Assembly (NCBI RefSeq): GCF_001194135.2
Contig: NC_068998.1
Location: 34,746,221-34,810,220 of the forward strand
Reading direction: 5' to 3'
Length of the DNA: 64,000 nucleotides
From: Octopus bimaculoides
Taxonomy: Eukaryota
Below are positions 1,500 through 56,958 of this stretch, in pieces. The position numbers and the translations under genes were made by a program. Position 1 is the stretch's first letter. Every line of letters starts with the position of its first letter. The notes beneath the pieces are model-generated. The model saw only the letters and a program-made list of their open reading frames with translations, ran no database searches and was not told where the DNA came from.

Positions 1500-1832
1500 T
1501 AAGCAGTTGTGGTCACTGAAAAAAGGTGGTAGTAGTACCAATAATTGTCAGAGTACTGGGAACAGTGAGTAAAAATCTTGAGAAGTACATGGAACAAATA
1601 GGGGCTGCAATAAGGGTGGAGCACTTGTAGAAAACAACACTGCTTGGAACAGCTCAAATATTTGGGATAGTGCTCAAAAATAAGNNNNNNNNNNTTGGAA
1701 CAGCTCAAATATTTGGGATAGTGCTCAAAAATAAGGGATGTTACCTCAGTTCACTGGTAGTGAACAGCTGACACCGTAGTACATCTCCAGCGTTAGAAGC
1801 TGTGCAAAGACAATAAAATAATAAAGATAATA
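1500..1832 (+). mobile_element. 3' end of a second R4/Dong-like non-LTR family
   Basis: Reads WSLKKVVVVPIIVRVLGTVSKNLEKYMEQIGAAIRVEHL*KTTLLGTAQIFGIVLK, followed by a 3' UTR and AAT-rich tail. The same 3' UTR recurs at 39571-39655. Confidence 0.8.
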
Positions 1833-7370: not shown

Positions 7371-7522
7371 GGAAAATGGAAAAGTCCAGAGAAGGAAAAA
7401 TATCACCAACAGCACATGTGTGGTTACAAATGCTTTGTCACAACACCAAATACTGCATTATCAGCCTTGAAAGATCCTCACTTATAGGTGCTTAGTGCAT
7501 AAAAATACACACATAGATCGTA

Positions 7523-7806
7523 GCAGATGAGAATTGTCTGTCATGGGTGCCAGAATTTTAATATTGTATGATTTTGGTCTCATACCTTTTGGAATTAATA
7601 CTGTTTCTCACAATAATAATTAATTTTTAATAAACCTGCTGTCTATTTGCAATGTCAGTGTCTGAAAAGATACTAGTATTCTATACACTGTGGCAGCGAG
7701 ATTTGACTGGCTTGTGGTAATTGGTGCTTCCCACTAATGAAGTCCAGTAGACCAAAATCATGTGATATGGAAATTCTGGTGCCCATGACAGACAATTCTC
7801 ATCTCT
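7523..7806. mobile_element. MITE with about 55-bp terminal inverted repeats and candidate TA target duplication
   Basis: AGATGAGAATTGTCTGTCATGGGTGCCAGAATT...ATGATTTTGGTCT (7525-7580) is the near-perfect reverse complement of 7749-7804. TA lies at 7521-22 and 7807-08. Confidence 0.75.
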
Positions 7807-7861
7807 TAGAGTCTGTGTATGTACTTTTATACACCAAGCACATATAAGAGAAGATCTCAAG

Positions 7862-8225
7862 GCTAATAATCTTTTCTACTCTAGGTACATGGCCTGAAAT
7901 TTTGAGGGAGGGGGCCAGTCGATTAGATCGACCCCAGTACACAACTGGTATTTAATTTATTGACCTTGAAAGGATGAAAGGCAAAGTCAACCTCGGCAGA
8001 ATTTGAACTTGGAATATAAGACAGATGAAATACTGCTAAGCATTTCGCCTGGTGTGCTAACATTTCTTATTTCTTTACTGCCCACAAAGAGTTAAACACA
8101 GAGGGGACAAAAAAGGACAGACAAAGTGGTTAAGTCAATTACATCGACACCAGTGTATAACTGGTACTTAATTTATCGACCCCTGGTGTGCTAACATTTC
8201 TGCCAGCTTGCTGCCTTTCTCAAGG
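7862..8225 (-). mobile_element. SINE family A copy with partial internal duplication
   Basis: Near full-length family A sequence. The blocks CTGGTACTTAATTTATCGACCC and CTGGTGTGCTAACATTTC each occur twice. Confidence 0.7.
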
Positions 8226-15423: not shown

Positions 15424-16325
15424 TGAGGGGGTATCCAGAAGTAGCCAGAAACGTTCTCTATGGGACAAGCCCGTTGTATTTTAGGCTTCTGTCACTAGAA
15501 GCCACTTGATGCAACCCTCAGGCATCAGCCTGCCAACATTTGTTGTCCAGTGTGGTCATACTGCCACATGGTGCGTTTTTGTTTTGCAGTGCTTCTCGCC
15601 GGTTTGTCAATTTTTTCAATGGCTGAAATGAACAGCTTGCTTCCATGAAATTCTGTTTTCTGCTTGGGAAAACGGCAGCTGGAACAGTTCTCACGCTTCA
15701 AACAGCTAACAAGGGTGCTGCCATGAGCAAAGCACAAGTTTATGAGTGGTTTCCATGCTTTAGGAGTGCTCACTTATATCACTTGAAGACCAACCTTGTC
15801 AAGGCATCTGTCAACTTCCTGAATGAATGAAAACATCATGAAAATTCATGAACTGATCGTGGAGGGCTGTCATTGAACAATTGACAAACTTGTTGATATA
15901 ATTAGTGTGTCCTGAGACTCCTGTCAACAAATTCTGTGTGAGGGATTACAAATGAAAAGAGTTGCGACAAAATTTGCACCTTGCTTGCTCACAGATCAAA
16001 AGCAGTCATAATTGAATGCATGTCATAAACTGAAAGAACAGTTGGAAGTTGATCCAGATCTTTTTTTTCAAAGATCATCACTGGTGACAAAAGCTGGTGC
16101 TATAGAATTTGCAGATGTGGAAGAGATGAAGAAAAAAGTGACGGAGGCATTAAAAGGCATCACTTCGCTAGAATTTCAGCACTGCTTCCAACAGTGGAAG
16201 ATGCATCAGGACAGATGCATTGCTTCAAATGCAGAATACTTTGAAGGTGATAAAAGTGTAAACATATAAAACTAAGTGAATGGAATAATATTGCAAAATT
16301 CTGGTTTCTTTTGGGTACCTTCTTG
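15424..16325 (+). mobile_element. Internally deleted mariner transposon with both TIRs
   Basis: TIRs TGAGGGGGTATCCAGAAGTAGCCAGAA and TTCTGGTTTCTTTTGGGTACCTTCTTG. Decayed N-terminus (MKFCFLLGKTAA..., KFAPCLL, ITGDKSW) is joined near 16105 directly to the C-terminus (EFQHCFQQWK...CIASNAEYFEGD). Confidence 0.9.
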
Positions 16326-16830: not shown

Positions 16831-18199
16831 TGTGTGTATTTGTTTCCACTTCTTTTTTAGAAATGGGTCAAAAGTAATTATTTTACTGCCAGATGCCCTT
16901 TCTGTTAGCAACACTTAGTTGTTTACAAACAAGCAAGTCTTTCCTTCTGCACATCTTCAAAAGTGCACAAAGTTACCCTGCAATTTGTTGACAGAGAAAT
17001 GTTATCAAAGAACATTAACCATTTCTCATACGAACATGGAATGTAAACATTCTTTGACACACGTGATTGTTGTACAGCATAACAAAAAACTAAATAGCAT
17101 TTATTTTCTTTATTAATATAATCCATTATCAACATGAAATTGGAAGGCATGATGAAAATAACTTTCAAGTTTACAATTAACCTGTTATAATGGAGATTGA
17201 AAATATTTTGGATGATAGCCTGCAATGTGCTCTATTCTGCTTACCTGAAATCATTACATGATCGTATTATGCAACGATCATGTGCAAGATATTAAATGGT
17301 TAAAAAGTTCTGGATTGAATTTCTTTCTGAATAAAAAAAAATCTAAAAGCCTACATCAACATAGTTGCAATCTATACCTTTGAAAACGTATTTCTGTAAA
17401 TTTTTATGGAAAAATGCACTCTATTAAAAAACATTATGGAAAGAAAAAAAAATCAAGAGATGGGCCACTACACTGTATGTATACACACACACACACGCAC
17501 ACACACACACCATTTCATATCATATAACAGACCGGATTTTGTTTACCATGTCAACTATTTTGAAAAGTTGACAGTGCATAGATGGCATTTCATAGAAAAA
17601 TGGAAAAAATTATGGAATGGATTTTCTGAACATGATTTTAATAACCAATATAAATTAAATTATGTATGAGAGAGAGAGAGCTCAAACAAAGAATTCATTC
17701 AAATAGATGCATGGAACATTTTTCTTTATAAACAAAATGAAGCAAAGGATGCTCACAGCTAATATTTTATGCCACCAATACCAGATGATTTTATTTTGGG
17801 GTGAAAGTGGGTTGGTATTCTACGATATCTCTTATTGGAGTTGGACAAACTTTTGTCTCATTGGGATCCTGTACTTGAAACTCATGTATGTAAACTCAAT
17901 GAAAGTTAAGCAAAAAAGACTTCATGCACATTATTTGTAAGCAGAATCACAAAATGAATTTATTTCTTTTGCCCCTATTTTGTTTTGAAATAATATTCTT
18001 AGAAAGATCAAATGCAAAATACCATTCAGTAATATCTGATGCAATATCTGATTCTATACATGTCAAACAGATAACATATATCATGCATTACCTTCAAAGT
18101 ATGGATTGTGAGTTTAAGATTCAAGGGAGATTTTAACTTAGGAAGACTGTAGTGAGAAAACAGGTTCTGCCATTGCAAACCTGATAGAGGAAGCTGCAA

Positions 18200-18790
18200 A
18201 TTACAATTGCATTTACTTGGAAAATTGCAGGAGTCTTGGAAACTATAGGATCAAAATGGCAATCAAGTACAAGGGAGTATAAAAGAAAACCAGACGATGG
18301 ATCCCAAGACTCAAGCAGAATCGTTATTTTGGACATCTACATTTTTATGTCATTATTAATTCAGTCAATGAAAATTTAAAGCTAAAAGGAAAATCTCTGG
18401 CATACAACTGAAAATACCTCTCTATGGGAAAATCTCACAGGATATGTTTTCAACAGTTTACAGTATTGATGTAAATGGCAAAGGACTTCCAAAGAAATTT
18501 ATCAACATTGAAACTATGATAAAACTGTGGAAACTTTGGGGAACTTCAACTTATACCCATCAATTTACTCTGCAAAATATATAAACTGGGAAATATTTTT
18601 CCATAACTTTGTCTATTACTTTGGATTTTTCTCCTGATGCCTGCAATGGCAGTCTCAGCGGAACATTCATTTCAGTAAGCTTAAACTGATAATGAACTAT
18701 CTCAAAACAAACATGTCTCTAGGTTGCTTGGTGGTCTTAACTCAACACAGCACTGAATTAGATCTCAGTGGAACTATTGATTTCAGATAT
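18200..18790 (+). pseudogene. Probable degenerate Polinton/adintovirus-type major capsid protein C-terminal fragment
   Basis: Frameshifted translation gives, in order, WIPRLKQNRYFGHLHFYVII, YSIDVNGKGLPKK, TLDFSPDACNG and KLKLIMNY...LVVLTQHSTELDL. Order and spacing resemble Polinton MCP motifs (F.GQLP...VI; L.VDG..IP.K; FDLTPD; LRLE.F). Recognised by eye only. Confidence 0.5.
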
Positions 18791-19864
18791 ATCATAGTAA
18801 ACTTTGCACACAAGAAAGCATGTAAGGCACTCCTGTAAAAGTGAAAACCCAGTCATTCATTCTATAATCTTTGATAATAAATAAATAATTAAAATTATTT
18901 ATTAGTTTTTGGCTTTAATAGTTTGGGGTTGGGACTCTAAAGCAGACCTGCTCTGGGATTAATTCTTACTCTTGGCAGCCTTTCTAATCTATTCCTTTTA
19001 TTTCTGAATGTCTTTTAGAATCAATTACTTTGTTACAGAATACTATTTTTGCTGATTTCATACTTCAGATTAAATCAAAGATAGAACATTGTCACGAGTT
19101 GACCAGGGGTTAGAATTGGACAATTGATGCTTGCTGGACATTGTTTGAGATAAGAGAGAGGAACAGCTTACATAAATGTTGAAGCTTTATGTTTTATTGT
19201 TGTTGATGTTGACCCCGGTTAAATCTGGTAAACAGAGCTTCAATAACAAGATATTCCAGCCAAATGGATTTCAGTCACTGTACATCTAGGACAACGTTAT
19301 CTAATGTATCCAGTTTTTCTTAGAAGGGAGGGTGTGATAATACAGATATTTGAATGTACTTTATTAACAAATCAAACAACTACACTGATACTTCTTGGAA
19401 ATTGTTATTTCTTAGCATCAGGTCAGACCTGATCGTGGTTATTCTAGCCTTGATCATCCTGTCTATTTAGGGTCATGTAAGAGTAATAATGCAAATTTAT
19501 GGCATTGGATATTTTACCTTAGCCTTCACCAAATACTGCTTCTATTTCAAATCATTCACACTCATTGTTTACATTTCTTAATTTTACACGACATGTAAAT
19601 GCCTGCATTGTACAATAATACCCCTCCACATACCTACCTTCATTCATATATGAATGTGTGTGTAGATAAGCCAGCTGGAGGAGATGTCCTCCTGGGGCTA
19701 AAAGCAACAGTAACATCCACCCCTAGGGGTCAGCCACACTTAAGTGGCAATATACTACACTTTATCGTGCAGTTACTGTTAATACTTCATTTAGAGAATT
19801 AACATTGCTTGTTTTCACCTTTTCGATATCAGTAAAGAATTTCACTGGAAAAGAAGATATAAGA

Positions 19865-19989
19865 TTGCCAGGTTTTTGTCTCTCTCACCAAGGTCAGCAG
19901 CTATCGAACGCCGACGAAGGGAAATAACCCTGAAATCCGGATCCGTTCGTGCTGCAGATGTTGGTGAGAGGGATAACTTCCCTTGGCAA
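19865..19989 (+). ncRNA. Type I hammerhead-ribozyme fold (core 19905-19949) at the tip of a long rod-like stem
   Basis: CGAACG-CCGACGA-AGGG(AAATAA)CCCT-GAAA-TCCGGA-TC-CGTTCG: 6-bp stem I, 4-bp stem II, short palindromic stem III, AUC triplet. Stem I extends via GCAGC/GCTGC, CTCTCACCAA/TTGGTGAGAG and TTGCCA/TGGCAA. One core deviation (U4 to C). Confidence 0.75.
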
Positions 19990-21282
19990 ACAGGACACAG
20001 TCGTGTGNNNNNNNNNNNNNNNNNNNNNNNNNNNNNNNNNNNNNNNNNNNNNNNNNNNNNNNNNNNNNNNNNNNNNNNNNNNNNNNNNNNNNNNNNNNNN
20101 NNNNNNNNNNNNNNNNNNNNNNNNNNNNNNNNNNNNNNNNNNNNNNNNNNNNNNNNNNNNNNNNNNNNNNNNNNNNNNNNNNNNNNNNNNNNNNNNNNNN
20201 NNNNNNNNNNNNNNNNNNNNNNNNNNNNNNNNNNNNNNNNNNNNNNNNNNNNNNNNNNNNNNNNNNNNNNNNNNNNNNNNNNNNNNNNNNNNNNNNNNNN
20301 NNNNNNNNNNNNNNNNNNNNNNNNNNNNNNNNNNNNNNNNNNNNNNNNNNNNNNNNNNNNNNNNNNNNNNNNNNNNNNNNNNNNNNNNNNNNNNNNNNNN
20401 NNNNNNNNNNNNNNNNNNNNNNNNNNNNNNNNNNNNNNNNNNNNNNNNNNNNNNNNNNNNNNNNNNNNNNNNNNNNNNNNNNNNNNNNNNNNNNNNNNNN
20501 NNNNNNNNNNNNNNNNNNNNNNNNNNNNNNNNNNNNNNNNNNNNNNNNNNNNNNNNNNNNNNNNNNNNNNNNNNNNNNNNNNNNNNNNNNNNNNNNNNNN
20601 NNNNNNNNNNNNNNNNNNNNNNNNNNNNNNNNNNNNNNNNNNNNNNNNNNNNNNNNNNNNNNNNNNNNNNNNNNNNNNNNNNNNNNNNNNNNNNNNNNNN
20701 NNNNNNNNNNNNNNNNNNCCATCATGAAATTTCAACTTCATTACCTTATATGGCAAATGTCATATTTGATGGTGTTGTCAGATAATTCTCCCATTGATTT
20801 CTCATATTCAATTTTTTTTTTTTTTTTAACATAATGAACTGAAAGTAAATAATATTTCTATAATATAAAAGTAATGATAATAAAAACATATATATTCCAG
20901 TTGATACTTTGAAATTTTATAAATAGTTTGGATATCTTTTTTGTATTAAGTGTAAGGAACTCAGATTAAATAGTCTGTCCAAAACCAAGAAAAATAAAAT
21001 GCCAGATTTTATTATTTAGAAGAAAATTCATCTAAAGAATATGATAGAAATAACCATCAATATTGATTGTCAGTGTAGATATAGTATATATAATATATGT
21101 ATGTGTGTGCATGCAAGTGTGTGTGTACACACATTTAAATCTGGAGTATGTATATGAATATATGCATGTATATATATTTATACTTATGTCTATCTATTTA
21201 TCTATCTATACACACACACACACATATATACATACAAACAAATATAATATATATATATGCAGACATATATAATATAAATATA

Positions 21283-21317
<35 letters not shown>

Positions 21318-22234
21318 NNNNNNNNNNNNNNNNNNNNNNNNNNNNNNNNNNNNNNNNNNNNNNNNNNNNNNNNNNNNNNNNNNNNNNNNNNNNNNNNNNN
21401 NNNNNNNNNNNNNNNNNNNNNNNNNNNNNNNNNNNNNNNNNNNNNNNNNNNNNNNNNNNNNNNNNNNNNNNNNNNNNNNNNNNNNNNNNNNNNNNNNNNN
21501 NNNNNNNNNNNNNNNNNNNNNNNNNNNNNNNNNNNNNNNNNNNNNNNNNNNNNNNNNNNNNNNNNNNNNNNNNNNNNNNNNNNNNNNNNNNNNNNNNNNN
21601 NNNNNNNNNNNNNNNNNNNNNNNNNNNNNNNNNNNNNNNNNNNNNNNNNNNNNNNNNNNNNNNNNNNNNNNNNNNNNNNNNNNNNNNNNNNNNNNNNNNN
21701 NNNNNNNNNNNNNNNNNNNNNNNNNNNNNNNNNNNNNNNNNNNNNNNNNNNNNNNNNNNNNNNNNNNNNNNNNNNNNNNNNNNNNNNNNNNNNNNNNNNN
21801 NNNNNNNNNNNNNNNNNNNNNNNNNNNNNNNNNNNNNNNNNNNNNNNNNNNNNNNNNNNNNNNNNNNNNNNNNNNNNNNNNNNNNNNNNNNNNNNNNNNN
21901 NNNNNNNNNNNNNNNNNNNNNNNNNNNNNNNNNNNNNNNNNNNNNNNNNNNNNNNNNNNNNNNNNNNNNNNNNNNNNNNNNNNNNNNNNNNNNNNNNNNN
22001 NNNNNNNNNNNNNNNNNNNNNNNNNNNNNNNNNNNNNNNNNNNNNNNNNNNNNNNNNNNNNNNNNNNNNNNNNNNGCAAAACAGATTATAATCCTATTGA
22101 TTGGCAACTAAGATTTTAAACCAAATAATGCACCAGAATAATAACATTTGGGAATAATATATCCAGAGGAGCTGACATGATGGAATCTGTTAATACTAGC
22201 TGAGCAAATAAAAATTCTAATAAATTGTTCTGTA

Positions 22235-22292
<58 letters not shown>

Positions 22293-22499
22293 TTCTAACT
22301 ATCCAAGTTGTTCTCAGGCACTTATTTACCTATCTGTCTGTCCCTCAATCAATTTATCTATCAGTCTGATTACCAAACTGCATATCTTAAAACTTCTTTC
22401 TTACAGTTAGGTCAGAAGATCACATTTCACACATACATTTTATATTTAGCATGCTTTCAGTAACTGGATGCCCTTCCTGGCACTAACCACTTTGTTCAA

Positions 22500-22900
22500 T
22501 GTACTGGGCGCATTTTATCATGACTAGTACCATAGGGTTGTCAACATCTGGACAAGATACAGTCTTCCATACTCTATCTTTTATTTTTTCCAGTTATTTT
22601 CTTACAGTCATGCTGGGGTACTGCCTTGAAGGGTTTTAGTCAATCAAAACAACCCCAGAACTTTTTTTTTCAAGCCTAGTACTTATTCTGTTGGTCATTT
22701 TTGATGAACTGCTAAGTTACAGGGACGTAAACACACCAGCACTGGTTATCAAGTGGTGGTGGTAAGGGTCACACACACATACACAATGTGCTTTTTCCAG
22801 TTTCCGCCTACCAAATCCACAGTAGAAGACACTTGCCCAAAGTGCCATGCAATGGGACTGAACCTGGAACCATGTGGTTGGCAAGAAAACTGCTTATTCA
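22500..22900 (-). mobile_element. SINE family B copy (composite, with RTE-tail-like segment upstream)
   Basis: AGAAGACACTTGCCCAAAGTGCCATGCAATGGGACTGAACCTGGAACCATGTGGTTGG is the reverse complement of the family B head. Confidence 0.7.
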
Positions 22901-22949
22901 CCAGCTACTTAACAGGTATGTACTAAACACAATTTTATCATGGATACCA

Positions 22950-23137
22950 ACATTAGAAAGGTGGTCGATTTTCATGGTGTTTAATCTGGTGGAAGGAACA
23001 CTGTACTCCTGACCCTCACAAGCCCATCCCTTAGGTAGATTGATATGGTTTATGCTCCACTTGAACCTAGAGAGGGCTGAATCTGTCATAAGAAAGAATG
23101 TTGGTCTGCTCAGAAAAGCGAGAATATAGTCTGACAA
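22950..23137 (-). mobile_element. Possible Gypsy RNase H fragment
   Basis: ORF 22898..23137 contains RPTFFLMTDSAL...PKGWACEGQEY, resembling the Gypsy RNase H pattern R.F.L.TDHSAL...P.G...W...QEY. Confidence 0.4.
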
Positions 23138-24080
23138 GAACTTGCACTGGACTGTAGTTATTGTTACTATTATTATTTTCTAATTCAGGTCAGATTTGTG
23201 ATTGAAAGCATTCCTACTGTGACCATCATGTATTTTCTTAAGTGCAGTGAATTTAAGACTGCATTGGTCAATAAGTTCTTTTGCAACAGTATGGGGTAAT
23301 GTTTGTAAGAGATTTAGCTACAGTTTCTACTGAGTCAAATGGCCAGAGGAACCCTGTTTAACTTATGGTTTTTAGGTGTTATGCAGGTGTGTGATAAATC
23401 ATTGGATACATCAAGTGAGTTACAGCTCGAGAAGAATTTGCATTTATTTCTGAAACACAGGTGGACTGAAGGATGTAGAATTATGTGAACAATCATCCTA
23501 ATTAATGTGAGCATGGATGCATGCATACATGTGTGTGTGTGTATGTGCATGTACGTGTGTGTGTACATATAAACAACCTTAGATATATACATACATATAT
23601 ATACAGAAATACATTATGTCCAGCCTTACATTCCTTATATGAACTCACAGAAATGAAAATATATTTTGTATGTTATGTTGTATAGTGTGGTTTATGCGTG
23701 TGTTTTCATGCTTCTGTTTATGTATGCATGTAAGTATGGTTTCATTTTATGTATGTTTGTGTGTGTGTGTGTGTTGATATTTATATATATATATATTAAT
23801 ATTTATATTTAAATATTAAATTTGGGTTTATTTTAAAGAAATTTTATAAATAACAACAAAGCATTTATCTATCCTGCACTTAATACTAACAATACAGTCA
23901 AATTTATTTTAAAATTAGTTTTGGACTGAGTCTTCAAGTTTCACTTTAAGCGATTGGATGAAATTTTGAAGGCCTTACAAAATTGACATTCACAATAATA
24001 AATAATAAATAAATATTTTCATCATATTTTAAAATGTATTAAGTCCTCTACTGGTAAGCAATCCTCTTAATTGCTTTTGT

Positions 24081-55026: not shown

Positions 55027-55741
55027 ATCATCATCATCATCATCATCGTTTAACGTCCGCTTTCCATGCTAGCATGGGTTGGACGATTTGACTGAGGACT
55101 GGTGCAACCGGATGGCTACACCAGGTACCAATCTAATTTGGCAGAGTTTCTACAGCTGGATGCCCTTCCTAACGCCAACCACTCAAAGAGTGTAGTGGGT
55201 GCTTTTATGTGTCACCCGCACGAAAACGGCNNNNNNNNNNNNNNNNNNNNNNNNNNNNNNNNNNNNNNNNNNNNNNNNNNNNNNNNNNNNNNNNNNNNNN
55301 NNNNNNNNNNNNNNNNNNNNNNNNNNNNNNNNNNNNNNNNNNNNNNNNNNNNNNNNNNNNNNNNNNNNNNNNNNNNNNNNNNNNNNNNNNNNNNNNNNNN
55401 NNNNNNNNNNNNNNNNNNNNNNNNNNNNNNNNNNNNNNNNNNNNNNNNNNNNNNNNNNNNNNNNNNNNNNNNNNNNNNNNNNNNNNNNNNNNNNNNNNNN
55501 NNNNNNNNNNNNNNNNNNNNNNNNNNNNNNNNNNNNNNNNNNNNNACGGTCACGCTCAGGATGGTACATCTTATGTGCCATCCGCACAAGAGCCAGTCCA
55601 GGGGCACTGGCAACGATCTCACTTGGCTTGCTGGGTCTTCTCATGCACAGCACATTTTCAAAGGTCTCGGTCAGTAGTCATCGCCTCAGTGAGGCCCAAT
55701 GTTCGAAGGTCTTGCCTCACCACCTCAGCTCAGGTCTTCCA
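55027..55741 (-). mobile_element. RTE-clade LINE 3' end (same family as 47500 and 24081), 5'-truncated, gap inside the UTR
   Basis: (CAT)n tail at 55027-55047; 55585-55741 is highly similar to 47503-47660. Confidence 0.9.
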
Positions 55742-55765: not shown

Positions 55766-56500
55766 AGGGTGTGGTGAATATATTGTCGTCTAAATTAGGC
55801 AAAAATGAAAATAATACTGACATCTCATTTTAACAGATATATTTACCAAAATTACATTAAAATAGTTTGAAATATTAAAGAGTAAATTTATTCAATAAAA
55901 TTGCCATTAGCTTCAACTACACTCTCCAGACGACCTCAAAATTCTGGATGGTCTCCTTGTTTAAGTTGGTAAATGCTGCCATAATCCTTGCCTTCATGTC
56001 ATTTTTGGAGTTACAAAGGGTTTTGTTGGTCTCTCACCCAACTGCGCCCCACACAATAATCAACAGGGTTGCAGTCTGGAGAGTTAGATGGCCCAAATTT
56101 AGGGGTAATGGGGTCGCAGGAATTGTCTGACAGTCATGACTAGGCTCTCCTGCTTTTGTGGCATGGGACAGAGTCCTGTTGCCAGAGTCCTGTTGCCAGA
56201 GATAGGGTCTTCCAGCAGTAACTTTGTTGACCCAGGTCAGCACTAGCTCCTCCAGGCACCTGATGTAGGTCCGTACCCGTTTTGATTCTGAGGCCATGTG
56301 GGAAGATGAATGGGGGCATAATGTTGCCATCACTATTGATCACTCCAAACACCATGATGCTGACTGGATGTTTGATTTTTATCGCTCTCAGTATATGTCC
56401 TCAAAGTGCACTAACTTCAGATTGACACCCAGACACTCTGAAATCTTTGCATTGGAGCTTCCAGCATGAATACCAATCAGTACAGCATGTCATTTCCAAA
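55766..56500 (-). mobile_element. DD37D (maT) transposon, internally deleted, 5' end replaced by a fold-back element
   Basis: TIR CAGGGTGTGGTGAA. Minus strand WQQDSVPCHKSRRA*S*LSDNSCDPITPKFGPSNSPDCNPVDY has exactly 37 residues between the second and third catalytic D. Confidence 0.9.
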
Positions 56501-56958
56501 TATTGACAATCCAATAATTTATTTATATTATAATATTGCATTATATACTATGAATATAATATAACATAATATTATATAACATAAACAATTATTAAAAAGC
56601 CACAGAAGGCCAACAAATTGTTTCAACTTATATACATTTTCTAATATACATACACAATAACAGTTCCCTTATGTATAAGTCACTTCACGGTAATGGTTTA
56701 AAGATAGACGGTTTTTTACAATCCAGCCCTCCTTTCACACGGAATTTTATCTATCTTTAAACCATTACCCTGAAGTCACTTATACATAAGCGAACTGTTA
56801 TTGTGTATATATATCAGAAAATGTATGTAAATCAAAACAATTTGTTGGCCTTCTATGGTTTTTTTAATAATTGTTTATGCTATATAATATTATGTTATAC
56901 TATGTTCATTGTATATCATGTAAGATTATAATATAAATAAATTATTGGATTGTCAATA
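56501..56958. repeat. AT-rich fold-back (about 210-bp inverted arms, about 35-bp spacer)
   Basis: TATTGACAATCCAATAATTTATTTATATTATAAT...TAATGGTTTAAAGATAGA is mirrored by TCTATCTTTAAACCATTA...ATAAATTATTGGATTGTCAATA. Confidence 0.9.

What the first reader, a model, noticed from the sequence alone, without database searches (positions are those of the whole stretch)
19865..19989. Hammerhead-ribozyme fold capping a 125-nt rod-like RNA stem, next to an unassembled gap (retrozyme or Penelope-like candidate)
Seen in sequence: a GC- and CpG-rich island in AT-rich DNA folds as a type I hammerhead. It has stem I CGAACG(19905-10)/CGTTCG(19944-49), core CCGACGA(19911-17), stem II AGGG/CCCT, GAAA(19932-35), a short stem III inside the palindrome ATCCGGAT, and an AUC triplet with predicted cleavage after C19943. 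Stem I continues through GCAGC/GCTGC, CTCTCACCAA/TTGGTGAGAG and TTGCCA/TGGCAA, much more pairing than expected by chance. Established: type I hammerheads with a short palindromic stem III occur in Penelope-like elements and in tandem metazoan retrozymes that yield circular RNAs, and can cleave as dimers. Inference: this is a monomer end of such an element, and the 711-bp gap starting 18 nt downstream of the stem may hide tandem copies. The U4-to-C change could be decay or a natural core variant.
Basis: partly seen in the sequence, partly recalled or inferred. Interest (0 to 1): 0.85.

Follow-up and report, generated by a model that had tools for sequence, protein, structure and literature searches.

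The report
Hammerhead-like ribozyme copy with altered core
A 125-base hairpin next to an assembly gap carries, at its tip, a nearly complete type I hammerhead self-cleaving ribozyme of the kind found in animal "retrozyme" repeats, with one catalytic-core base changed (C for U at position 4); it is most likely one more copy of a known class of mobile repeat, and nothing here shows that it is active or repeated in tandem.

Summary
Bases 19865-19989 fold into a rod (z about -8) whose tip has the layout of a canonical metazoan type I hammerhead. Helix I is 6 bp, helix II is 4 bp, and helix III is 2 bp inside the perfect palindrome AUCCGGAU. The cleavage site is C17 (19943). All conserved positions are present except U4, which is C at 19912.

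A descriptor allowing one core mismatch finds only this site in the window and 0.002 sites per shuffled window. Two covariance models built from experimentally validated retrozyme hammerheads rank it second in the window (15.7-17.3 bits, E 0.007-0.02). Two copies are predicted to co-fold into a double hammerhead with an 8-bp helix III. A single copy prefers an inactive rod in which C3-C4-G5 pair with the palindrome.

Against membership, Rfam's hammerhead models give no match even at E<=10. I found no second copy in the window or in any collection I could reach. The far side of the gap is unrelated. No Penelope reverse transcriptase or endonuclease lies nearby.

Best reading: a young-looking copy of a retrozyme-type hammerhead repeat in a probable cephalopod genome, with the known attenuating U4C change. 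It is a new member of a known kind, of modest interest. Activity, tandem structure and the family consensus remain untested.

The parts
19865..19989 (+). Whole rod-like hairpin with the hammerhead-like domain at its tip
   Evidence: MFE -64.9 kcal/mol for these 125 nt. It has 44 pairs, 4 of them G-U, on the + strand. z -7.8 in the 158-nt context.
19866..19901 (+). 5' arm of the distal rod (extension of helix I beyond loop 1)
   Evidence: Pairs with 19951-19988. Duplex energy -50.5 kcal/mol, z -9 against shuffles.
19902..19904 (+). Loop 1, 5' side (UAU). It forms an internal loop with U19950, 6 bp from the core.
   Evidence: Fold. Its position matches loop 1 of canonical metazoan type I hammerheads (helix I 6 bp; PMC4209133).
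19905..19910 (+). Helix I, 5' strand (positions 2.6-2.1), CGAACG
   Evidence: Six Watson-Crick pairs with 19944-19949.
19911..19917 (+). Core C3-A9 = C C G A C G A. Position 4 (19912) is C instead of the conserved U.
   Evidence: Read from the sequence. It is the only core mismatch found by the descriptor.
19918..19931 (+). Helix II (AGGG/CCCU, 4 bp, A10.1-U11.1) with loop 2 AAAUAA
   Evidence: Present in every predicted fold.
19932..19934 (+). Core G12 A13 A14
   Evidence: Read from the sequence. Aligned to GAA of the validated ribozymes by models R1 and R2.
19935..19942 (+). Helix III region: the perfect 8-nt palindrome AUCCGGAU (A15.1 to U16.1). As a monomer it forms 2 bp plus a CCGG loop. 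In a dimer it forms an 8-bp intermolecular helix.
   Evidence: Sequence. The co-fold of two copies forms the 8-bp helix III with both cores unpaired.
19943..19943 (+). C17. The predicted cleavage is 3' of this base.
   Evidence: Its position in the hammerhead layout. Cleavage was not tested.
19944..19949 (+). Helix I, 3' strand (positions 1.1-1.6), CGUUCG
   Evidence: Pairs with 19905-19910.
19951..19988 (+). 3' arm of the distal rod
   Evidence: Pairs with 19866-19901.
19990..20007 (+). 18-nt tail (ACAGGACACAGTCGTGTG) between the rod and the gap. It is predicted to form a small hairpin.
   Evidence: Fold. It is unique in the window at up to 3 mismatches.
20008..20718 (.). Unassembled gap (711 N) that may hide the rest of the element
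   Evidence: Twelve of the 18 gaps have microsatellite on at least one side, whereas this gap has complex sequence on both sides.

Best explanation
This is one genomic copy of a hammerhead-bearing repeat of the animal non-LTR retrozyme type.

Shown here:
- The + strand RNA has a canonical metazoan type I hammerhead layout at the tip of a long helix I rod.
- One core base differs from the consensus (C4 instead of U4).

Inferred mechanism:
- A lone copy rests in the rod. C3-C4-G5 pair with the CGG of the helix III palindrome, so the catalytic core is sequestered.
- When two copies lie in one transcript (a tandem array) or meet in trans, the palindrome AUCCGGAU forms an 8-bp helix III shared by two hammerheads.
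- Each hammerhead then cuts 3' of C17 (19943), releasing unit-length RNA.
- In characterised retrozymes, that RNA is circularised by a tRNA ligase and copied back into DNA by Penelope-type reverse transcriptase.
- C4 is expected to slow cleavage. In silico it also stabilises the inactive rod by about 2 kcal/mol.

At this locus only one copy is visible. It is either the first unit of an array lost in the gap, or a solo or truncated copy with little or no activity.
For: - Layout and coordinates were read directly from the sequence.
- The descriptor with one or fewer core mismatches hits only this site. It gives 0.0022 hits per shuffled window, none with a palindromic helix III.
- Covariance models were built only from validated ribozymes taken from the supplement of PMC7229834. 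R1 used coral, mussel and axolotl Ax353. R2 added axolotl Ax330. They score the site 17.3 bits (E 0.007) and 15.7 bits (E 0.02), second best in 128 kb searched, with a full-length alignment and no non-canonical pair.
- The same model found nothing at E<0.3 in 39 kb of other DNA.
- Helix sizes and the 2-bp helix III with a palindromic tetraloop match the published description of canonical and invertebrate-type hammerheads.
- The conserved GAAAY/RUH parts of the published catalytic-centre consensus are met.
- The co-fold of two copies is a double hammerhead, at -133.3 against 2 x -64.9 kcal/mol.
- The rod is far beyond chance (z -8 to -9). It is stronger on the + strand, where all 4 wobble pairs are G-U.
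- Seven intact CpGs in a window with CpG o/e 0.25 suggest a young insertion or constraint.
- The element sits at a contig end flanked by complex sequence, as expected for a repeat that breaks short-read assembly (PMC8557442).
- A second, decayed hammerhead-like site lies in the same window at 7726-7776.
- Hammerhead_1 hits are reported in a cephalopod genome (235 in giant squid; PMC6962438).
- The window shares mariner families with Octopus bimaculoides.
Against: - U4, an otherwise near-invariant core base, is C. Core variation is rare in nature, and U4C considerably lowers activity in vitro (PMC3088659).
- Rfam 15 gives no hammerhead match at any threshold tried.
- My own models rest on 3-4 sequences, so their E-values are rough. 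They score a site with two lethal core changes (7726) slightly higher.
- There is no second copy in the window, no upstream repeat of the tail, and the right flank of the gap is unrelated.
- No paralogue or orthologue was found in any collection I could reach. There is therefore no covariation, no consensus and no copy number.
- The monomer's minimum-energy fold is not the catalytic fold (8.5 kcal/mol apart).
Confidence: 0.6

Rival explanations
1. The hammerhead belongs to the pseudo-LTR of a Penelope-like retrotransposon (autonomous or truncated) rather than to a small non-autonomous retrozyme.
For: - Penelope-like elements carry type I hammerheads in their terminal repeats.
- They act as dimers, are often found as single truncated motifs, and disturb short-read assemblies (PMC4209133; PMC8557442).
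- Penelope elements are present in cephalopods.
- About 1.5 kb near the site is hidden in two gaps.
Against: - No reverse transcriptase or GIY-YIG endonuclease signal in six-frame Pfam scans of 17600-20007 and 22076-25000.
- Metazoan Penelope hammerheads are the minimal form: helix II 7-8 bp, helix I 4-5 bp, and little or no helix III.
- This one has the canonical 6 bp / 4 bp / 2 bp-plus-tetraloop form that the authors assign to retrozymes.
Confidence: 0.12
2. A single-copy structured RNA gene of another kind, for example a long microRNA precursor or other hairpin RNA. On this reading the hammerhead resemblance of its apical part is coincidental.
For: - A long near-perfect hairpin with preserved CpGs could reflect selection on a host RNA.
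- There is no paralogue in the window.
- Rfam does not call it a hammerhead.
Against: - The apical 45 nt match 12 of 13 conserved hammerhead positions together with three correctly placed helices and a palindromic helix III. The expectation is 0.002 per window even without the palindrome.
- No microRNA or other Rfam family matches either.
- A 49-nt three-way apical domain is atypical for a microRNA precursor (my own knowledge).
Confidence: 0.08
3. A DNA-level inverted repeat (foldback or MITE-like element, or an assembly-end palindrome) with no RNA function. The hammerhead-like centre is coincidental.
For: - The window holds other long inverted repeats, at 7457-7870 and 56501-56958.
- The element lies at a contig end.
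Against: - The same chance argument applies as for the previous rival.
- All four transition differences between the arms give G-U on the + strand rather than A-C. This makes the + RNA 12 kcal/mol more stable than the - RNA, which a pure DNA palindrome does not predict. The evidence is weak (p about 0.06).
Confidence: 0.07
4. A domesticated single-copy hammerhead that cleaves a host transcript, as with the intronic HH9/HH10 ribozymes of amniotes.
For: - Only one copy is seen.
- CpGs are preserved.
- Single conserved genomic hammerheads exist in vertebrates (PMC3088659).
Against: - No gene model or coding exon could be recognised around it.
- A helix III of 2 bp in a palindrome points to dimeric use in repeats, not to a stand-alone ribozyme.
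- C4 weakens catalysis.
- Rfam HH9/HH10 give no match.
Confidence: 0.05

Closest known systems
Canonical type I hammerheads of metazoan non-LTR retrozymes (Cervera & de la Pena 2020, PMC7229834)
   Same: - Type I topology.
- Helix I 6 bp up to an internal loop 1, and helix II 4 bp with a 5-6-nt loop.
- GAAAY/RUH elements of the catalytic centre.
- Short palindromic helix III.
- Helix I continues into a highly self-paired rod.
- Predicted dimeric action.
   Different: - C4 instead of U4, and A10.1-U11.1 instead of the usual G-C.
- Only one copy is visible, rather than tandem 170-400-bp units.
- No expression or circular RNA data.
- No sequence similarity outside the core to the coral, mussel or axolotl units.
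Amphibian satellite/axolotl hammerheads (HHR_Amex1/Amex2)
   Same: - Helix III of 1-2 bp capped by a palindromic tetraloop.
- Poor as monomers and efficient as dimers.
- Amex2 also departs from G10.1-C11.1, with a U-U mismatch.
   Different: - Different host lineage (the window is probably cephalopod).
- Different helix sequences.
- The axolotl cores keep U4.
Minimal hammerheads in Penelope-like element terminal repeats (Cervera & de la Pena 2014, PMC4209133)
   Same: - Type I topology and dimer-dependent action.
- Often found as isolated motifs.
- Associated with retroelements and assembly problems.
   Different: - The minimal form has helix II 7-8 bp, helix I 4-5 bp and essentially no helix III. 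Here the form is canonical.
- No RT/EN reading frame nearby.
Natural U4C hammerhead variant of a viroid (Ambros & Flores 1998, as cited in PMC3088659)
   Same: The same core substitution. It shows that C4 can be tolerated in vivo despite a strong loss of activity in vitro.
   Different: It occurs in a plant viroid RNA, not in an animal genomic repeat. The original paper could not be read here.
Rfam RF00163 Hammerhead_1
   Same: It is the family model meant to describe type I hammerheads.
   Different: The site does not reach the gathering score, nor even E<=10, in three searches.

Membership tests
Hammerhead ribozyme, type I | Three helices around the core, with helix I open and helices II and III closed (type I topology) | tested here: met
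   Sequence reading and constrained fold. Descriptor hit. Full-length alignment to models R1 and R2 with no non-canonical pair.
Hammerhead ribozyme, type I | Conserved core C3 U4 G5 A6 N7 G8 A9 / G12 A13 A14 / A15.1-U16.1 / H17 | tested here: not met
   Twelve of 13 positions fit. Position 4 (19912) is C, not U. U4C is a known natural variant with strongly reduced in vitro activity.
Hammerhead ribozyme, type I | Match to the curated covariance model (Rfam RF00163) at its gathering score | tested here: not met
   No hammerhead family is reported at gathering score on the window, nor at E<=10 on 308-nt and 66-nt slices.
Hammerhead ribozyme, type I | Similarity in sequence and structure to experimentally validated animal type I hammerheads | tested here: inconclusive
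   Home-made models from 3 and 4 validated ribozymes give 17.3 bits (E 0.007) and 15.7 bits (E 0.02), rank 2 in the window. The training sets are small and the calibration is rough.
Hammerhead ribozyme, type I | Site-specific self-cleavage 3' of position 17 | not testable with these tools
   Needs in vitro transcription of monomer and dimer constructs.
Canonical metazoan type I hammerhead (retrozyme type) | Helix I 6 bp to loop 1, helix II 4 bp, helix III 1-2 bp capped by a 2-4-nt palindromic loop | tested here: met
   The site has 6 bp, then 4 bp, then 2 bp plus a CCGG loop inside the palindrome AUCCGGAU. The definition comes from PMC4209133.
Canonical metazoan type I hammerhead (retrozyme type) | Ability to form the double-hammerhead (dimeric) conformation | tested here: met
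   RNAcofold of two copies gives an 8-bp helix III with both cores open. The energies are -133.3 against -129.8 kcal/mol for the full element and -51.5 against -48.0 for the 66-nt core. This is a prediction only.
Non-LTR retrozyme | Tandem repeats of about 170-400 bp, each with a type I hammerhead | tested here: inconclusive
   One copy is visible and the window holds no other. The tail is not repeated upstream. 711 bp are hidden by the gap, and the right flank is unrelated.
Non-LTR retrozyme | Highly self-paired (rod-like) unit RNA | tested here: met
   The 125-nt rod has z -7.8 and its arms have z -9. The full unit is unknown.
Non-LTR retrozyme | Expression as linear and circular RNA of unit length | not testable with these tools
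   No transcript data were available.
Penelope-like element | Adjacent reading frame with telomerase-like RT and GIY-YIG endonuclease | tested here: not met
   Pfam scans of six-frame translations of 17600-20007 and 22076-25000 gave no RT or EN, only a weak hAT dimerisation hit. The gaps 20008-20718 and 21318-22075 and the stretch 20719-21317 were not covered.
Penelope-like element | Minimal hammerhead architecture (long helix II, short helix I, no helix III) | tested here: not met
   The architecture is canonical, not minimal.

The most novel reading that the evidence does not exclude
C4 may be the native state of a whole family of animal hammerhead repeats, not a lesion of this copy. On that reading it is an attenuated ribozyme. 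The C4-G5 CpG locks the monomer into the rod by pairing with the helix III palindrome and slows cleavage. Methyl-CpG deamination at the DNA level (CCGA to CTGA) would then convert copies to the canonical, faster core. That would be a natural core variant with a built-in switch in a metazoan genome.
Probability: 0.1. Interest if true: 0.55.

Novelty: new member of a known kind. Interest (0 to 1): 0.3.

Why it matters
Type I hammerheads in retrozymes and Penelope-like elements are already known to be widespread in animals, so one more copy changes little.

It would matter modestly in two cases:
- If paralogues show that C4 is the family consensus, it would be a natural, tolerated core variant in an animal.
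- If the element proves to be an expressed circular-RNA-producing retrozyme in a cephalopod, it would fill a gap, because I found no description of one in the papers searched.

As it stands, it is a well-formed but unproven example. It is also a reminder that such repeats break short-read assemblies.

Tried and rejected
- **Rfam.** Three searches (whole window at gathering score; 308 nt and 66 nt at E<=10) gave no hammerhead and only spurious lncRNA fragments.
- **Six-frame protein search for paralogues.** A chimeric six-frame query of 19780-20007 against 5.8 billion proteins gave nothing.
- **Exact-pattern scans.** The pattern CGCYGAYGAAGGGN6CCCTGAAA was scanned in metagenome, viral and prokaryote genome collections. 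It gave three hits, all inside bacterial coding sequence without helix I, so they are chance.
- **Literature search for the sequence itself.** No result.
- **Recovering the locus from a better assembly.**
  - Exact look-ups of two mariner ORFs found nothing on record.
  - A 1692-aa chimera of flanking ORFs gave no hit.
- **Full HMMER search with the 71-aa open frame across the element.** It gave one hit, a 210-bp tandem repeat in a metagenome contig. The score was inflated by 7 repeats, and the contig has no hammerhead.
- **Octopus bimaculoides locus and an ENA contig** fetched through mariner relatives. Neither holds a hammerhead-model hit (E<0.3). The O. bimaculoides locus shares mariner families with the window at 70-87%. 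The BLAST of the hairpin itself against these two loci did not run, because the script stopped first.
- **BLAST against the four published retrozyme units.** No similarity outside the core.
- **tRNA scan for a SINE head.** None found.
- **Bacterial promoter/terminator scan.** Irrelevant and uninformative.
- **First four-sequence MAFFT alignment.** It misaligned Ax330. I replaced it with a three-sequence alignment and an N-padded manual alignment.

Full report
**Setting.** The window is a draft eukaryotic assembly.
- It has 18 runs of N, 33.6% GC and CpG o/e 0.26 (0.25 after masking simple repeats), with many (TA)n and (CA)n tracts.
- Reading frames are remnants of mariner and LINE-type elements.
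- The best named relative of one mariner frame is an Octopus bimaculoides protein at 67% identity.
- A 20-kb O. bimaculoides locus shares the window's mariner families at 70-87% nucleotide identity.
- The source is therefore probably a cephalopod, though this is not proven.

**The observation.**
- Bases 19865-19989 fold into a rod of 44 pairs.
- In its 158-nt context the + strand folds at -71.1 kcal/mol against -40.3 +/- 4.0 for shuffles (z -7.8). The - strand gives -58.9.
- The distal arms alone give z -9.
- All four wobble pairs are G-U on the + strand. This weakly favours an RNA read from that strand.
- The hammerhead-like part has 7 CpG in 45 nt, the highest density in the window.

**The motif.** Read in hammerhead numbering:

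| Element | Sequence and coordinates |
|---|---|
| Helix I | CGAACG / CGUUCG, 6 bp, bounded by an internal loop UAU/U |
| Core | C3 C4 G5 A6 C7 G8 A9 (19911-17) |
| Helix II | AGGG / CCCU, with loop AAAUAA |
| Core | G12 A13 A14 |
| Helix III region | palindrome AUCCGGAU, from A15.1 to U16.1 |
| Cleavage site | C17 at 19943 |

- This is the architecture that Cervera & de la Pena give for canonical metazoan type I hammerheads. They describe helix I of 6 bp, helix II of 4 bp, and helix III of 1-2 bp with a 2-4-nt palindromic loop, acting as dimers.
- The GAAAY/RUH elements of their catalytic-centre consensus are met.
- The only departure in the conserved core is C for U at position 4.
- A10.1-U11.1 replaces the usual G-C. 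A validated axolotl ribozyme has a U-U mismatch there.

**Is it chance?**
- A descriptor demanding these helices and allowing one core mismatch hits only this site in the window. It hits 0.0022 sites per dinucleotide-shuffled window (7 in 3235), and none of those has a palindromic helix III.
- Taken with a rod at z -9, a coincidence is very unlikely, even genome-wide.

**Independent model test.**
- Rfam 15 reports no hammerhead family at gathering score, nor at E<=10 on 308-nt and 66-nt slices. This is a failed membership test and I record it as such.
- I then built covariance models from ribozymes whose cleavage was shown experimentally. R1 used coral Amil224, mussel Mg353 and axolotl Ax353, and R2 added axolotl Ax330. 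The sequences came from the supplement of PMC7229834.
- With filters off, the site scores 17.3 bits (E 0.007) with R1 and 15.7 bits (E 0.02) with R2. It aligns full-length with no broken pair and ranks second in the window.
- The same model finds nothing better than E 0.3 in 39 kb of other DNA.
- These models are small and their E-values are rough, so I count this as moderate support only.

**Predicted behaviour.**
- As a monomer, the minimum-energy fold is not the catalytic one. C3-C4-G5 pair with the CGG of the palindrome and extend the rod, at -64.9 against -56.4 kcal/mol for the hammerhead fold.
- With U at position 4 in silico, the rod is 2.2 kcal/mol weaker.
- Two copies co-fold into a double hammerhead. 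It has an 8-bp helix III, both cores open and both C17 unpaired, and it is 3.5 kcal/mol better than two separate rods.
- This is the behaviour described for newt, axolotl and many metazoan hammerheads, which cleave poorly alone and well as dimers.
- U4C is reported to lower activity considerably in vitro, yet to remain sufficient in vivo for viroid infectivity.

**What kind of element is it?**
- The canonical rather than minimal architecture points to the retrozyme class rather than to Penelope-like elements.
- Six-frame Pfam scans find no reverse transcriptase or GIY-YIG endonuclease in 2.4 kb upstream or in 22076-25000 downstream.
- The defining tandem arrangement is not visible. There is no second copy in the window. 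The 18-nt tail is unique. The sequence after the gap is unrelated.
- The gap is flanked by complex sequence on both sides, whereas 12 of the 18 gaps have microsatellite on at least one side. This fits a repeat that stopped the assembler, but does not prove it.

**Paralogues.**
- Every route to related sequences failed. These were protein-space searches of translated frames, pattern scans of three DNA collections, exact look-ups and a literature sequence search.
- There is therefore no covariation evidence and no answer on whether C4 or U4 is the family state.
- Seven intact CpGs in a CpG-poor window suggest a young copy. That makes a post-insertion T-to-C change and a C4 master copy comparably plausible. 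This last point is inference.

**Context.**
- The models also flag 7726-7776 at 20.1 and 17.9 bits.
- That site has G5A and G12A and sits in a 414-nt inverted-repeat rod at 7457-7870 (z -11.5).
- By hand, five transitions would restore a perfect canonical hammerhead with a 10-nt palindromic helix III. At least two of the five are at former CpGs. It may therefore be an old, decayed solo copy.
- Rfam-based annotation reported 235 Hammerhead_1 loci in the giant squid genome.
- Both facts raise the prior that hammerhead repeats live in this lineage.

**Verdict.**
- The most likely identity is a copy of a retrozyme-type hammerhead repeat with the attenuating U4C change (confidence about 0.6).
- The Penelope, host-RNA, DNA-palindrome and domesticated-ribozyme readings are less likely.
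- It is a new member of a known kind and of modest interest.
- Catalysis, tandem structure, expression and the family consensus are all untested, and they are the decisive experiments.

Noticed in passing
window 7726-7776 (+): A second hammerhead-like site, top hit of both home-made models (20.1 and 17.9 bits). The sequence is GCUUCCCACUAAUGAAGUCCAGUAGACCAAAAUCAUGUGAUAUGGAAAUUC. It has G5A and G12A, an A-C mismatch at 10.1/11.1 and a near-palindromic helix III. Five transitions would restore a perfect canonical type I hammerhead, so it may be a decayed relic.
   Followed up: partly
window 7457-7870: A long inverted repeat or rod, with arms 7457-7585 and 7745-7870 about 81% complementary. It folds at -171 kcal/mol (z -11.5) and encloses the decayed hammerhead-like site. 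Its size (414 nt) is in the range of retrozyme units, but it shows no similarity to published units. It could also be a foldback or MITE-type element.
   Followed up: partly
window 43798-45825 and 55777-56500; also 15528-16266: Several mariner/Tc1-type transposase remnants with frameshifts. The 44-46 kb and 56 kb copies are 77-89% identical to each other and 70-87% identical to a mariner copy on Octopus bimaculoides chromosome record CM046625.1.
   Followed up: partly
window 47500-47654, 55586-55740, 55027-55203 and 24257-24432: A dispersed repeat family (90-94% identity between copies). Some copies abut assembly gaps, and two are CpG-rich. It may be a SINE-like element.
   Followed up: no
window 1685-1694: A 10-N gap flanked on both sides by the same 41-nt sequence (ttggaacagctcaaatatttgggatagtgctcaaaaataag). 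It looks like two overlapping contig ends that were not merged, which would be an assembly artefact.
   Followed up: no
window 56501-56958 and 46042-46403: Two further long palindromic stretches. Each matches its own reverse complement, at 85% over 462 nt and 76% over 374 nt.
   Followed up: no
window about 18560-18706 (+) and 36985-37272 (+): A weak hAT dimerisation-domain match (Pfam E 0.03, below the cut-off), and a 95-aa frame that by eye resembles the C-terminal part of a LINE reverse-transcriptase protein. Both are degraded transposon fragments.
   Followed up: no
L004 2934-4545 (JGI metagenome contig Ga0558718_23039): A 210-bp tandem repeat (7.7 copies, 99% identical) that is open in one frame and called as a 541-aa protein. 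It surfaced only as a repeat-inflated spurious hit and has no hammerhead.
   Followed up: yes
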